64,000 nucleotides of DNA, taken from assembly GCF_006345805.1 (NCBI RefSeq), contig NC_043021.1, positions 11,780,001 through 11,844,000 of the forward strand, given 5' to 3'. The stretch comes from Octopus sinensis. Its lineage: Eukaryota. Shown one piece after another: positions 33,541-39,566 of this stretch (positions are counted from its first letter, which is position 1; each line of letters starts with the position of its first letter). The position numbers and the translations under genes are program-made. The notes under the pieces are model-generated. The model was not told the DNA's origin and searched no databases. It saw only the letters and a list, made by a program, of their open reading frames with translations.

Positions 33541-33562
33541 CGCAGGTAATATCTATTACGGC

Positions 33563-33628
33563 GAAGGCGGCGAGGTGGCAGAAACGTTAGCATGCCAGGC
33601 GAAATGCGTAGCCGTATTTCGTCTGCCG
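33563..33628 (+). mobile_element. SINE E 5' head interrupted by the LINE
   Basis: GGCGGCGAGGTGGCAGAAACGTTAGCATGCCAGGCGAAATGCGTAGC followed by CGTATTTCGTCTGCCG; the body resumes at 38916. Confidence 0.9.
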
Positions 33629-33859
33629 CACATGTGTTCGTGGTAAGAATTGCTGTTTCGTGGTGTTAATATTGTTAATAACTGTTGTTTCTTGTTAAAC
33701 TGTTGAATAACTTAACTGTTGGAGTTTTCAATTGAAAACACTTAGTGCTTGTGGTAGCACGCGTTGTTCATTCCCCCTTTGGGGGGAAGAATGTCGTCTA
33801 GCATGGAGCCTACCGTTGGAGCATAAATACTTGTTTCTCCTGTTGAGAGGAGGAAATAC

Positions 33860-35319
33860 ATGTCCGGCGAGGAGCCAACTATAGACAAGGAAATAGGGGT
33901 TTCCCCCGCTACAAGAAGGAATAGCAGAGAGGATAATATATTTGATATTTTTGGAGATGTGTCTGAGAGCTCGTCAGAACTTTCACCAGAAGAGTTTCCG
34001 ACTTTGCCAGAGAACAAAGGCATTGTGTCGAAGAGAATAATTGATGTGCCTAGCATCCAGATAGAACCAAAAAATGGAAAAAAAAGTTTTGCGTTGGCTG
34101 CTGGGGGTGGAACCCAGATACTGTCGACGAATAAAAGCGAAATTATGAAATACAGCAAAATGATGGAAATAACTGACAACGGTGTGAAAATTGAACCTCC
34201 GCAAAAGTTATTACAGGAAGAAAAGCAAAAAACAATAATTTTCAAAACATATTGTCTACAAGAAAGAAAAATTGAAAGAATGTCAGAAGAGAAAATAGAA
34301 AAGTGCTTAAAGCCAATATTGGGCGACGTAGTATTTCTGAGAAGAGGAAAAAAATTCGGAACGGTGGAAGTAAGGTTCACCAATAAAGAAATAGCACACA
34401 AGAACTCAGTTGAAACGTTGAAAACGAACGACGTGGAGTTAATCCCCTATTATATGGGGATGAGGACGTCGTGAATAAAAATTACAAGGGTCCCGCCAGA
34501 GGTCGAACCTATGTGGTTGTTGGCGGCAGTCCTAATCAAAGAGGTAGAAAAAATTACTCTCCTCCAGGCTACCGCTACGGAAAACCCACGCTGGGATGGT
34601 CAAACAATTAATCTTCTCATTCAAGCGGACCCTAAAATAATTCAAACAATTCCTGAGACAATTGAGGTAGGGGAGGAGAACCTCGTGGTGTTTGTTGAGG
34701 GCCGAAAACCTCGATGTTTTTTATGTGGTCAATTAGGCCACATTCGAAGGAACTGCAAGGAAAATGAAGAAGAGGAGGAAGAGGAGAAAAAAGACAAAGA
34801 GGAAGAAGATAAAGAAGAAACAGATGAGAAAAAAACAACAAACAAAAGAAAAATACAACCAGCAACCCAGCCGAGAGCGGCGACTACTACAGAACAATGA
34901 CCAAAAAAGACTGCCAGAAGAGAAAAAGAAGAAAAAGGCATAATAGCCGTATACACTAAAGATACTGAGCTCATGAGAGACATTCAACTCATAAAGACTG
35001 TAAAAAAATTGATAACCTTTCAGAGGAATTTATCAATTACGACATATATGAAGTCTCAAATAAGACTTATAGAATTCTACAAAATAAGTACAGAAAGACT
35101 GTATCTTCATTGAGATTAGATTTTAACAAGTCAATATTTCATGGATTACCAGCTCCGATCCCGCGAGAAAAGGAAAAGGTGGAGATTCCCCCTCCACCTG
35201 ATAATTCTGTGTCGGTGGTGAGACGGGATTTTGACAAATCTATTTCCCAAGACCGTCCACCTCCGACCCTGGATCAAAAAAAGGTGGAGGGTCCCCCTCC
35301 ACCGGACAATCCTAATTAA
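33860..35319 (+). pseudogene. LINE ORF1 (RRM-like region plus CCHC knuckle), interrupted
   Basis: 33860-34474 and 34511-34900 are in the same frame, separated by one TGA (probable CGA to TGA); CFLCGQLGHIRRNC knuckle; downstream part disrupted. Confidence 0.8.
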
Positions 35320-35327
35320 ACAGGTAA

Positions 35328-38300: not shown

Positions 38301-38670
38301 CCCTCACGCTATTGTTCAGTGTCCGGAGATAACTGAAATGTGGGCTTATGCTGAACATCTGTTGTCCGGCGAAGGAAGAGTACGGCTGTCAACTGAGTCA
38401 ATTATAAAAATTGACCCACCGGGAGTTCTAATGAACGATGGTAAGAATTGTTTTCTCACGGTTGTAGCAATAGCAAAAGAGGCAGTATGGAAGACTAGGA
38501 TAAAAGGAATTAAGACAGGCAACTTTATCTCTGGTGACAATTTACGACCCTTTTTTTCTTTTCATTTGAAAAGGAAACTGTGGCTGGAGAAGAGGTGTCT
38601 GTCAGAGTGTACGTTCCAAAAGAGATGGAAGTATGTTGCACGAGTGTTGTGCGTGCAAGGAACCGTGTGA
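35328..38670 (+). pseudogene. LINE ORF2 (AP endonuclease, reverse transcriptase, C-terminal zinc finger), frameshifted
   Basis: APE motifs CLNVHGL, ATET, VLGDSN, YLDRI, SDH; RT motifs LDQSKAFDRVDH, QGCPLSPLLY, FADDI; C-terminal CPRC...H...C; at least four frameshifts (about 36105, 37490, 37950, 38290). Confidence 0.9.
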
Positions 38671-38915
38671 AATGACGAGGGGGAAAAAAAAGGAAAAATA
38701 AAAAGGTATCAGCGGTAGATCGGGACTTGTGGGATCGGAGCGTAACTTGATCATCGCTTCATTTGTATTGTTTTTGTACTGTGTATTCCATTCGATTTTT
38801 ATGTATTGTATTTTATTTTTGAAGTCACATTTATGTAAAATCATATCGATTCACTGATCCCATCAGTTGTACTGTCCATATCTATGTTTGGCCCCCGGTG
38901 GGCAATAAAGAAATT

Positions 38916-39468
38916 CGTATTTCGTCTGCCGTTACGTTGTGAGTCCAAATTCCACCGAGGTCGACTTTGCCTTTCATCCTTTCGGGGTCGATAAATTAAG
39001 TACCAGTTACGCACTGGGGTCGATGTAATCAACTTAATACCTATGTCTGTCCTTGTTTGTCTCCTCTATGTTTAGCCCCTTGTGGGTAATAAAGAAATAC
39101 GTATTTCGTCTGCCATTATGTTCTGAGTTCAAATTACGCCGAGGTCGAATTTGCCTTTCATCCTTTCGGGGTCGATAAATTAAGTACCAGTTACGCACTG
39201 GGGTCGATCTAATCGACTTAATCCGTTTGTCTGTCCTTGTTTGTCCCCTCTATATTTGACCCCTTGTGGGTAATAAAGAAATATGTATTTCGTCTGCCAT
39301 TATGTTCTGAGTTCAAATTCCGCCGAGGTCGACTTTGCCTTTCATCCTTTCGGGGGTCGATAAATTAAGTACCAGTTACGCACTGGGGTCGATGTAATCG
39401 ACTTAATCCTTTTGTCTGTCCTTGTTTGTCCCCTCTATGTTTAGCCCCTTGTGGGCAATAAAGAAATA
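38916..39468 (+). mobile_element. SINE E body/tail-1 chain, three 184-bp units
   Basis: Junctions at 39099/39100 and 39283/4; the whole compound 33563-39468 is flanked by the 15-bp TSD AATATCTATTACGGC (33548-33562, 39469-39483). Confidence 0.9.
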
Positions 39469-39566
39469 AATATCTATTACGGCCATGCAGAACGAAGAGA
39501 TGAAAAAAAAAAAAAATCCGTGCCAGGGGCAGCTACTCTGCATTTACTCATTTCATCGTTCACATC

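What the first reader, a model, noticed from the sequence alone, without database searches (positions are those of the whole stretch)
33548..39483. Tx1-type LINE inserted inside a tRNA-SINE at the exact register used by that SINE's own tandem chains: candidate self-targeting LINE/SINE system
Seen: SINE head, then CGTATTTCGTCTGCCG, the 5.3-kb LINE, the same 16-mer again, and then the SINE body, all inside an outer 15-bp TSD. Also seen: the 184-bp SINE units at 14470-15432, 16474-17074, 33366/7 and 38916-39468 all restart at the first base of this same 16-mer, directly after a tail ending AAAGAAATA. Established: Tx1-clade APE retrotransposons include sequence-specific families (Tx1/Tx2 into DNA transposons, Keno into U2 snRNA genes, Dewa into tRNA-gene spacers, Mutsu into 5S rDNA). 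Inference: this LINE's endonuclease cleaves a site in the head of the SINE it mobilises. Each SINE copy would then be both cargo and a new safe landing pad, a positive-feedback niche I do not recall being described in cephalopods.
Basis: partly seen in the sequence, partly recalled or inferred. Interest (0 to 1): 0.92.

Follow-up and report, generated by a model that had tools for sequence, protein, structure and literature searches.

The report
Octopus LINE nested in partner SINE
A dead L1-type jumping gene sits inside a copy of the short element it mobilises, cut in at the same spot where those short elements join head-to-tail; this points to a preferred short landing motif carried by the short element, not to a proven strict self-targeting system.

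Summary
The window is Octopus sinensis. A 5,287-bp LINE (33629-38915) lies in a SINE chain, flanked by an exact 16-bp duplication. The whole composite lies inside an exact 15-bp duplication. O. bimaculoides has the empty outer site. O. vulgaris has the same LINE (99.4% identical), so this is not an assembly artefact.

The LINE is L1-superfamily (APE + RT closest to human L1 ORF2p; ORF1 with a CCHC knuckle). It is defective and shares its last 35 nt with the SINE (29-31/35). Placement in the Tx1 clade was not tested.

Its first-strand nick (SINE position 49|50) is the register of all nine head-to-tail SINE joints in the window. A second register (16|17) is likewise hit by a separate insertion with its own 22-bp duplication. 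So chain joints are most likely retrotransposition nick sites.

Targeting is not SINE-exclusive. Three SINE arrays landed in unique DNA at AATATTT, GGTATCA and AATATCT. This motif (RRTATY) occurs once in the SINE, at position 50. The closest relative (Argonauta, 60% identical) sits in non-SINE DNA. Chains then grow by unequal crossing-over.

Only one LINE copy could be examined, so "self-targeting system" is partly supported at best.

The parts
33548..33562 (+). Outer target-site duplication, 5' copy (AATATCTATTACGGC)
   Evidence: Exact pair with 39469-39483. Single copy at the empty site in O. bimaculoides, L005 20666-20680.
33563..33612 (+). SINE head (positions 1-49, plus one leading G)
   Evidence: blastn match to the SINE query positions 1-64 at 98%. 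Sequence read. O. vulgaris has the same head with a 9-bp indel.
33613..33628 (+). SINE positions 50-65; 5' copy of the 16-bp duplication made by the LINE
   Evidence: Exact 16-mer. Begins with the motif CGTATTT.
33629..38915 (+). L1-superfamily LINE, 5,287 bp, full length but defective
   Evidence: Domains. Frame map against the Argonauta relative. Closest solved structures are human L1 ORF2p. The O. vulgaris ortholog is 99.4% identical over 4.09 kb.
33860..34900 (+). ORF1 with one CCHC zinc knuckle; interrupted by an in-frame stop at 34472-34474
   Evidence: the ORF listing. Pfam zf-CCHC E=1.6e-5. tblastn with Argonauta ORF1 runs through the stop in one frame.
35328..36146 (+). ORF2 apurinic/apyrimidinic-type endonuclease domain
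   Evidence: Pfam Exo_endo_phos E=1.1e-8. Best PDB matches are L1 ORF2p and the L1 endonuclease.
36275..37516 (+). ORF2 reverse transcriptase domain
   Evidence: Pfam RVT_1 E=4.6e-27. PDB: L1 ORF2p 3.7e-38 against R2 5.7e-19. 60% identical to Argonauta hians P0002.
37494..38673 (+). ORF2 C-terminal region, spread over three frames
   Evidence: tblastn frames 2, 1 and 3. At least 4 frameshifts in ORF2 overall. Relatives carry Pfam zf-RVT here.
38881..38915 (+). LINE 3' tail shared with the SINE (TCTATGTTTGGCCCCCGGTGGGCAATAAAGAAATT)
   Evidence: 29-31 of 35 nt identical to SINE tails. Predicted to fold as the same small hairpin in LINE, SINE and Argonauta relatives, but z-scores are weak.
38916..38931 (+). 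3' copy of the 16-bp duplication; also the first 16 nt of SINE unit D1
   Evidence: Exact 16-mer.
38916..39468 (+). Three head-to-tail SINE units: D1 38916-39099, D2 39100-39283, D3 39284-39468
   Evidence: TRF period 184, 3.2 copies. blastn. Unit alignment shows D2 = 5' part of D3 + 3' part of D1.
39469..39483 (+). Outer target-site duplication, 3' copy
33031..33540 (-). Neighbouring SINE array C, inverted, 7 bp from the outer duplication. Layout: head, unit C1 (positions 63-234), unit C2 (51-234), then a position-17-start SINE with a different tail
   Evidence: O. bimaculoides has one unit fewer here. The direction of that change is ambiguous.
45430..45905 (-). Composite showing the second nick hotspot. 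SINE positions 1-38, then a 28-bp SINE tail fragment, then positions 17-234, then a position-17-start SINE with the other tail. All inside one duplication, AATTAAGACTGTAT
   Evidence: The O. bimaculoides ortholog lacks the 50 bp made of the 22-bp duplication of positions 17-38 plus the tail fragment.
14471..15431 (-). SINE array A (5 units). Inserted at CACGAT|AATATTTATG
   Evidence: Empty site in O. bimaculoides. O. vulgaris has about 2.6 units and no head.
16474..17097 (-). SINE array B (3 units, with a 23-bp duplication in the head). Target duplication GGTATCAAG
   Evidence: Single-copy GGTATCAAG at the empty site in O. bimaculoides.

Best explanation
A full-length L1-superfamily LINE inserted into an existing head-to-tail SINE chain by target-primed reverse transcription. 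It is probably of the L1-Tx1 kind reported in Octopus, and it is the autonomous partner of this SINE because they share the 3' tail.

Timing: the insertion happened in the common ancestor of O. sinensis and O. vulgaris, after the split from O. bimaculoides.

Mechanism: the bottom strand was nicked between SINE positions 49 and 50. The top strand was cut 16 bp downstream, which gave the 16-bp duplication.

The same nick position is the register of the SINE chains because this retrotransposition machinery prefers a short target, RRTATY(T), immediately 3' of the nick. The SINE carries exactly one such site on its sense strand, GGTATTT at position 50. A SINE RNA landing there, with its 5' end resolved through homology with the resident SINE, gives a clean tail-to-position-50 joint. 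Arrays then expand and contract by unequal crossing-over.

The preference is strong but not exclusive. The same machinery also inserts into unique DNA that carries the motif.

Shown: the two duplications, the registers, the empty sites, the motif, and the mosaic structure of units.
Inferred: that the LINE drives the SINE; that chain joints began as nested insertions; and whether the motif reflects endonuclease specificity or base-pairing of a read-through 3' extension of the template RNA (the next unit begins GGUAUUU).
For: 1. Exact 16-bp and 15-bp duplications. The outer site is empty in O. bimaculoides. The same composite is present in O. vulgaris.
2. APE, RT and CCHC domains. Closest solved structure is L1 ORF2p: 3.7e-38 against 5.7e-19 for R2.
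3. The LINE tail matches SINE tails at 29-31 of 35 nt.
4. All nine unit joints and the LINE 3' junction share one register.
5. A second insertion bounded by its own duplication (28-bp SINE tail fragment, 22-bp duplication) begins exactly at the other joint register, position 17. It is absent from the O. bimaculoides ortholog.
6. Three non-SINE targets were verified by empty sites: AATATTT, GGTATCA and AATATCT. All fit RRTATY at +1 to +6. The background frequency is 0.0026 per position, so three of three gives about 2e-8.
7. In the SINE, position 50 is the only sense-strand RRTATY(T) site.
8. In Argonauta, seven of seven tails of the related LINE and SINE are followed by (C)TAT. The background for TAT is 0.027.
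9. Internal units are 5' of the last unit joined to 3' of the first unit in arrays A, B and D. Array A has 5 units in O. sinensis and about 2.6 in O. vulgaris. Both observations fit unequal crossing-over.
Against: - Only one LINE insertion (with its ortholog) could be examined.
- The position-17 hotspot (AGAAAYG) does not fit RRTATY, so a short motif cannot be the whole story.
- Two of five motif-type insertions in the region comparable with O. bimaculoides lie in SINE position-50 sites. Those sites are only 8 of 174 RRTATY sites there, which gives p of about 0.02. This hints at extra preference beyond the 6-mer, but the window was picked after the fact.
- Clean joints in arrays A, B and D could equally have formed by template jumping during a single insertion event.
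- The extra unit in array C cannot be polarised, i.e. insertion in one lineage or loss in O. bimaculoides.
- Partnership of LINE and SINE rests on tail identity alone.
Confidence: 0.6

Rival explanations
1. True self-targeting system. The LINE's endonuclease, or its ribonucleoprotein particle, specifically recognises extended sequence or structure in the SINE head. Most new LINE and SINE insertions go into SINE heads, which serve as safe landing pads.
For: - Two precise hotspots in the head are each used by an independent insertion bounded by its own duplication.
- All chain joints share those registers.
- The second hotspot lacks the RRTATY motif.
- There is modest excess over the motif expectation: 2 of 5 events against 4.6% of sites.
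- The 3' junctions are precise while the 5' junctions vary, as in site-specific LINEs.
- Tx1-clade families with target preference, and partner SINEs sharing that preference, are documented (PMC4494074).
Against: - Arrays A, B and D landed in unique DNA.
- So did the 5'-truncated SINE copies at 3874-4176 and 9303-9345.
- The closest relative, in Argonauta, is in AT-rich non-SINE DNA with a 17-bp duplication.
- Of roughly a dozen SINE heads in the window, one holds a LINE.
- A 6-7-nt motif already accounts for position 50.
Confidence: 0.2
2. A one-step composite. A single retrotransposition event at AATATCTATTACGGC copied several RNAs in series by template jumping: SINE units, then the LINE, then a SINE 5' part. 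There would be no second integration.
For: - The whole composite is inside one 15-bp duplication and is absent as a whole from O. bimaculoides.
- No intermediate (chain without LINE) was found; O. vulgaris already has the LINE.
- Clean tail-to-position-50 joints are what end-to-end jumps would give.
Against: - The exact 16-bp repeat on both sides of the LINE is what staggered target cleavage produces. Under template jumping it would need an unexplained landing at an internal RNA position, exactly 16 nt offset.
- The 22-bp duplication around the tail fragment at 45.8 kb is absent in O. bimaculoides, which shows stepwise addition at a chain register.
- The head and units would need at least five consecutive jumps.
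Confidence: 0.08
3. Coincidence. The LINE landed at random in an abundant SINE, and the shared register has no common cause. The chains are purely DNA-level tandem duplications or copies of a multimeric master.
For: - SINEs make up about 9% of this window and 11.6% of the O. vulgaris genome (PMC13282606).
- Unequal crossing-over clearly operates.
- The window was selected because it looked striking.
- There is only one LINE copy to judge from.
Against: - Only 3 of about 1,200 possible nick positions (both strands) in the 602-bp array match the chain register.
- A second independent insertion also hits the other register exactly.
- First and last units of array A belong to different tail subfamilies (CCCTTGTGGGTAGTA against CCCCCCGTGGGCAATA). 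The dimer there is therefore not an in-place duplication.
- Units of arrays A and B do not share a common dimer ancestor.
Confidence: 0.12

Closest known systems
Tx1L inside Tx1D in Xenopus laevis, and other target-preferring Tx1-clade LINEs (Keno in U2 snRNA genes; Kibi and Koshi in microsatellites)
   Same: An APE-type LINE of the L1/Tx1 group sits inside another, non-autonomous repeat at a fixed position and is flanked by a duplication. The 3' junction is precise (PMC4494074; Tx1L details from my own knowledge).
   Different: In those families the target is a third-party sequence and nearly all copies are in it. Here the target is the LINE's own partner SINE, about half or more of the events are elsewhere, and only one LINE copy was seen. 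Tx1-clade membership of this LINE was not tested.
Tx1-Mar LINEs and SINEU SINEs of crocodilians (Kojima 2015, PMC4494074)
   Same: A SINE and its Tx1 partner share a target preference. Nested and tandem SINE insertions that sandwich a target duplication are common. The window has such a case at 3874-4176.
   Different: There the shared target is a Mariner DNA transposon. Here the preferred site lies in the SINE itself, so insertion produces SINE chains.
Human L1 and Alu: insertion into A-rich parts of resident Alus (own knowledge)
   Same: The partner SINE carries the LINE endonuclease's short preferred motif, so SINEs become frequent landing sites. Head-to-tail SINE clusters arise without strict specificity.
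   Different: The L1 motif (TTTT/AA) matches the poly(A) tail. Here the motif is RRTATY in the SINE head. The elements have no poly(A) and use a specific shared 3' tail.
Stringent LINE-SINE pairs with a common 3' tail (for example UnaL2 and UnaSINE1; Ohshima and Okada 2005, cited in PMC4758252)
   Same: The SINE 3' end is copied from the LINE 3' end (29-31 of 35 nt), with a small predicted hairpin upstream of the terminal AAAGAAAT.
   Different: Those pairs belong to the L2/CR1/RTE-type clades. A shared specific tail in an L1-superfamily element is less usual. Mobilisation was not tested here.
Multimeric tRNA-related SINEs (dimers and trimers, for example colugo CYN; cited in PMC4758252)
   Same: SINEs built of repeated units that carry a single promoter-bearing head.
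   Different: In those, multimers are inherited from master copies. Here arrays differ in unit number between sister species, and their units come from different subfamilies. That points to local formation and local expansion.

Membership tests
L1 superfamily of APE-type non-LTR retrotransposons | ORF2 with an N-terminal APE endonuclease followed by a reverse transcriptase | tested here: met
   Pfam Exo_endo_phos (1.1e-8) at 35328-36146 and RVT_1 (4.6e-27) at 36275-37516. The order is confirmed by the tblastn map.
L1 superfamily of APE-type non-LTR retrotransposons | RT and endonuclease closer to L1 than to other clades | tested here: met
   Among solved structures, human L1 ORF2p scores 3.7e-38 against R2 at 5.7e-19 for the RT. 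Only L1 endonucleases match the APE domain. The comparison is limited to clades that have solved structures.
Tx1 clade (within L1/Tx1) | RT groups with Tx1 references in a phylogeny (RTclass1 or Repbase) | not tested
Indirect support only: L1-Tx1 is the only L1-like category among recently active O. vulgaris LINEs (PMC13282606).
Tx1 clade (within L1/Tx1) | ORF1 with CCHC knuckle(s), not the mammalian L1 ORF1 type | tested here: met
   zf-CCHC at 1.6e-5, with no match to the mammalian L1 ORF1 family. This feature is not unique to Tx1.
Target-specific LINE family (Kojima's working criterion: one kind of sequence in more than 20% of flanks) | A large share of independent copies flanked by the same target at the same position | not testable with these tools
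   Only one LINE copy and its ortholog were found. The protein database holds no copy above 60% identity. Scans of the fetched loci and of metagenomes found none.
Target-specific LINE family (Kojima's working criterion: one kind of sequence in more than 20% of flanks) | Partner SINE shows the same target preference | tested here: inconclusive
   SINE joints and one tail fragment use the SINE-head sites 49|50 and 16|17. Arrays A, B and D, and the copies at 3874-4176 and 9303-9345, lie in unrelated DNA.
LINE-SINE partner pair with a common 3' tail | SINE 3' end homologous to the LINE 3' end | tested here: met
   29-31 of 35 nt identical. TRF extends the SINE repeat into the LINE tail from 38881. 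The Argonauta LINE and SINE show the same relation.
LINE-SINE partner pair with a common 3' tail | The LINE mobilises the SINE in trans | not testable with these tools
   Needs a retrotransposition assay. Supporting only: similar duplication lengths (9-22 bp) and a shared target motif.
tRNA-derived SINE (SINE2) | Head recognisable as tRNA-like by sequence and structure | tested here: not met
   Aragorn found 0. Rfam found 0, including at E<=10 on 136 nt of a complete head. A B-box-like GAGTTCAAATTCC is visible by eye. The origin may be too diverged to detect.

The most novel reading that the evidence does not exclude
The LINE/SINE pair has a real self-targeting niche. The retrotransposition complex recognises two exact positions in the SINE head (16|17 and 49|50). 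It could do so through endonuclease specificity, through pairing of a read-through RNA extension with the target, or through the polymerase III machinery bound there. If so, most new copies pile into existing SINEs, building chains that shelter both elements from selection.
Probability: 0.2. Interest if true: 0.7.

Novelty: new variant of a known kind. Interest (0 to 1): 0.45.

Why it matters
SINEs make up more than a tenth of octopus genomes, and L1-Tx1 LINEs are among the recently active families. How these SINEs come to form head-to-tail chains has not, to my knowledge, been explained.

This locus, with its sister-species comparisons, gives a concrete and testable mechanism. The SINE carries its partner LINE's preferred nick motif, so it is a frequent landing site. 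Unequal crossing-over then amplifies the result.

If the preference proves much stronger than the motif predicts, it would be a case of a LINE using its own cargo as a safe harbour. That would extend the known range of Tx1-type targeting. If not, it is an ordinary nested insertion that documents the target preference of a cephalopod LINE family.

Tried and rejected
1. Collecting other copies of the LINE.
- The RT query found nothing above 60% identity.
- The Argonauta relative has a single annotated copy.
- ENA hits belong to unrelated organisms with no such SINE.
- A metagenome scan with the LINE 3' end found 0, as did a scan of the fetched loci.
- Two extra O. vulgaris loci held neither a SINE tail nor a LINE: L007 (40 kb) and L008 (25 kb).

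2. tRNA identification of the head failed with Aragorn and Rfam.

3. Chains as pure in-place DNA duplication: rejected for array A. Its first and last units carry different tail subfamilies.

4. Chains as copies of one dimeric master: rejected. Units of arrays A and B share no unit-specific differences.

5. Array C as clean empty-site proof of a nested insertion at 49|50. I first read it that way. On checking, the informative sites are interleaved, so loss of a unit in O. bimaculoides cannot be excluded. It is reported as ambiguous.

6. Priming by simple annealing of the RNA tail to the nicked target: rejected. The junctions keep both the full tail and the full target.

7. Assembly artefact: rejected, because the composite is present in two independent assemblies.
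Full report
ORIGIN AND REALITY OF THE FEATURE

The window is Octopus sinensis chromosome CM016883.1 (GCA_006345805.1). This was identified through the 1,830-aa ORF at 22209-27701. Window position 1 corresponds to about 11,780,001 in that record.

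Orthologous loci were fetched from O. bimaculoides (L005) and O. vulgaris (L006).

- The 15-mer AATATCTATTACGGC occurs exactly twice, at 33548-33562 and 39469-39483.
- The 16-mer CGTATTTCGTCTGCCG occurs exactly at 33613-33628 and 38916-38931.
- Between the two 16-mers lie 5,287 bp of LINE.
- After the second 16-mer the SINE continues for three 184/185-bp units.

O. bimaculoides has a single AATATCTATTGCAGC followed by the same flank (CATGCAGAAC...). The whole composite is therefore an insertion relative to that species.

O. vulgaris has the same head, 16-mer and LINE at the orthologous place. Its LINE is 99.4% identical over the 4.09 kb available. The structure is therefore not an assembly artefact. 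It predates the O. sinensis / O. vulgaris split.

WHAT THE LINE IS

- ORF1 (33860-34900) has a CCHC knuckle and one in-frame stop.
- ORF2 has an APE endonuclease (Pfam 1.1e-8) and a reverse transcriptase (4.6e-27).
- Mapped against its closest relative, ORF2 needs at least four frame changes. The copy is dead.
- The RT is closest to human L1 ORF2p (3.7e-38; R2 scores 5.7e-19). The APE domain matches only L1 endonucleases among retrotransposon structures.
- L1-superfamily membership is therefore supported.
- Placement in the Tx1 clade could not be tested, because no references were at hand. L1-Tx1 is, however, the only L1-like category listed among recently active O. vulgaris LINEs (PMC13282606).
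- The closest protein is from Argonauta hians, at 60% identity.

PARTNERSHIP WITH THE SINE

- The last 35 nt of the LINE match SINE tails at 29-31 positions.
- The Argonauta LINE and the Argonauta SINEs share the corresponding tail...GGCCCTTGTGGCTAATA(A/G)AGAAAT.
- The tails fold into the same small hairpin in silico, but the z-scores are weak.
- The SINE head is not recognised as a tRNA by Aragorn or Rfam. Only a B-box-like motif is visible.

THE REGISTER

- Every unit-to-unit joint in the four arrays reads GAAATA|(G/C/T)GTA(T/C)TTCG. The LINE 3' junction reads GAAATT|CGTATTTCG.
- The bottom-strand nick that primed the LINE is therefore at the same phosphodiester bond (SINE 49|50) as the chain joints.
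- There is also a second register, tail|AGAAA(C/T)GTTAGC (SINE 16|17). It occurs at 33183/2, 45620/19 and 45833/2, and at three or four places in the O. bimaculoides locus: 20444, 22566 and 8066, plus 7893, which is followed by an assembly gap.

ARE THE CHAIN REGISTERS NICK SITES?

Two insertions bounded by their own duplications say yes.

1. The LINE itself has a 16-bp duplication that starts at position 50.
2. At 45.8 kb, O. sinensis has 50 extra bp relative to O. bimaculoides. They consist of a 28-bp SINE tail fragment plus a 22-bp duplication of SINE positions 17-38. This is a 5'-truncated insertion whose duplication starts exactly at position 17.

For a random landing inside the SINE, each coincidence has a chance of roughly 1 in 200-400. 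The two together are very unlikely.

Array C has one more unit in O. sinensis and O. vulgaris than in O. bimaculoides. It has a non-seamless junction, in which head position 32 is joined to unit position 63 through a GCCG microhomology. I first took this as a third proven case. However, the informative sites do not polarise the change, and unit loss in O. bimaculoides remains possible. It is only compatible.

The 23-bp head duplication in array B ([1-23][1-49]) could be the footprint of a nested full-length insertion. It could equally be a simple duplication.

IS THE TARGETING SINE-SPECIFIC?

No, not strictly.

- Arrays A, B and D are all absent from O. bimaculoides and lie in unique DNA. Their targets, read from the empty sites, are CACGAT|AATATTTATG, GGAG|GGTATCAAG and AGGT|AATATCTATT.
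- All three fit RRTATY at +1 to +6. The background frequency is 0.0026 per position and strand, so three of three gives about 2e-8.
- The LINE's own target is CGTATT, and the chain register is GGTATT.
- Other SINE ends are followed by GGTAAAATA and TATTAATG.
- Within the SINE, position 50 is the only sense-strand RRTATY(T) site. Once an insertion lands in a SINE in that orientation, the motif alone predicts the register.
- In Argonauta, seven of seven tails (one LINE, six SINE) are followed by (C)TAT (background for TAT is 0.027).
- The full-length Argonauta LINE (L001 4886-10650) has a 17-bp duplication, TATTTTTAAAATTTGTA, in AT-rich non-SINE DNA.
- The Argonauta SINE has no such motif in its head, and no chains are seen in that locus. 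The sample is small.

IS THERE PREFERENCE BEYOND THE MOTIF?

Possibly.

- In the region comparable with O. bimaculoides there are 174 RRTATY sites, 8 of them in SINE position-50 context.
- Two of five motif-type events (the LINE and, if it is an insertion, unit C1) are in such sites. This gives p of about 0.02, but the window was chosen after the fact.
- The position-17 hotspot does not fit the motif. Its first bases (AGAAAT) resemble the element's own terminal AGAAATA. The bottom strand at position 50 (CGAAATACC) does too.
- Something more than a 6-mer may therefore be read. I cannot resolve this from sequence alone.

HOW THE CHAINS GROW

- In arrays A, B and D the internal units are mosaics: the 5' part of the last unit joined to the 3' part of the first unit. 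That is the signature of unequal crossing-over acting on a dimer.
- Array A has five units in O. sinensis and about 2.6, with no head, in O. vulgaris.
- The founding dimers are not in-place duplications. The first and last units of array A carry different tail subfamilies, and arrays A and B share no unit-specific differences.
- The founding joint is best explained by nested insertion at 49|50, with the 5' end resolved through homology with the resident SINE.
- Template jumping within one event cannot be excluded for A, B and D. It does not explain the two duplications that start at the registers.

MECHANISM, STATED PLAINLY

Shown:
- the two nested duplications;
- the empty sites;
- the shared tail;
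- the shared register;
- the motif at non-SINE targets;
- unequal crossing-over.

Inferred:
- that the LINE family mobilises the SINE;
- that chain joints start as nested target-primed insertions;
- that the motif reflects endonuclease preference.

An alternative I cannot separate from endonuclease preference: template RNAs that read through from an internal tail into the next unit end in GGUAUUU, and this extension pairs with targets that look like it. That would make the joint self-perpetuating. Co-transcribed target sequence is reported to strengthen target-specific integration in other LINEs (PMC4494074).

COMPARISON WITH KNOWN SYSTEMS

- The closest analogues are Tx1L in Tx1D and, above all, the crocodilian Tx1-Mar and SINEU families. 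There a Tx1 LINE and its SINE share a target, and tandem SINEs sandwich a duplication (PMC4494074).
- Another analogue is L1 and Alu, where Alu's A-rich stretches attract L1-driven insertions (own knowledge).
- The difference here is that the preferred site lies in the head of the partner SINE itself, and that its use generates SINE chains.
- I rate this a new variant of a known kind.

LIMITS

- One LINE copy only.
- Small numbers throughout.
- No Tx1 phylogeny.
- No biochemistry.

Noticed in passing
window 22209-27701 (+): An intact, intronless 1,830-aa ORF with no Pfam domain on record. Near its C-terminus a 24-nt unit is repeated about 15 times (SEESEDQI, 27182-27548). It has an 83%-identical ortholog in O. 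bimaculoides and 49-63%-identical paralogs in O. vulgaris, O. sinensis and O. bimaculoides. It looks like an octopus-restricted family of unknown function.
   Followed up: partly
window 39484-39700; ATG at 39567: The SINE/LINE composite ends 83 bp upstream of the start codon of a YdjC-family gene (called with Pfam YdjC in the O. bimaculoides ortholog, L005 20765). About 5.9 kb was therefore inserted into the promoter or 5'-UTR region of this gene in the O. sinensis / O. vulgaris lineage.
   Followed up: partly
window 3874-4176 (-): Two 5'-truncated SINE copies, both starting at the same SINE position, are sandwiched by three copies of the target TATTAATGTTT (duplication-SINE-duplication-SINE-duplication, 97% alike). 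This could be re-use of one target, or duplication between the flanking repeats. It resembles the tandem SINEU-3 arrangement in crocodilians.
   Followed up: partly
window 33031-33182 (-) and 45430-45619 (-); L005 8067-8270 (+): A second SINE family has the same head and body but a different 3' tail (...CCCCAAAATTT.GGCCTTGTGCC...GTAGAAAAGRAT). It always starts at position 17 and always follows a tail of the first SINE. Either this is a dimeric SINE that moves as a unit, or it reflects repeated use of the 16|17 site. The different tail implies a second, related partner LINE.
   Followed up: partly
window 33540-33563: The composite was inserted 7 bp from the 5' end of another SINE array (C) in inverted orientation, so the two SINE heads face each other. 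This may be chance or a local preference.
   Followed up: no
window 14471-15431 against L006 3024-3510: Array A has 5 units and a head in O. sinensis. In O. vulgaris it has about 2.6 units and no head, preceded by unrelated sequence. This is a rapid structural change or an assembly difference between sister species.
   Followed up: partly
window 33563-33571 against L006 21374: There is a 9-bp indel (GAAGGCGGC) at the very start of the SINE head between O. sinensis and O. vulgaris, lying between short GGCGA repeats.
   Followed up: no
window 17053-17097 (-): A perfect 23-bp tandem duplication of the first 23 nt of the SINE head in array B, shared with O. vulgaris.
   Followed up: partly
window 8200-8646 (+): A 148-aa ORF resembling the C-terminal part of a reverse transcriptase from another LINE family (MVRPHLEFASPVWNPY...). 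It is unrelated to the LINE studied here.
   Followed up: no
L001 4886-10650 (Argonauta hians): A near-intact 5.8-kb relative of the LINE. ORF1 is 476 aa, and ORF2 is split once between the APE and RT parts. It has a 17-bp duplication and a duplicated ~400-bp 3' UTR segment (10014-10144 resembles 10421-10553).
   Followed up: partly
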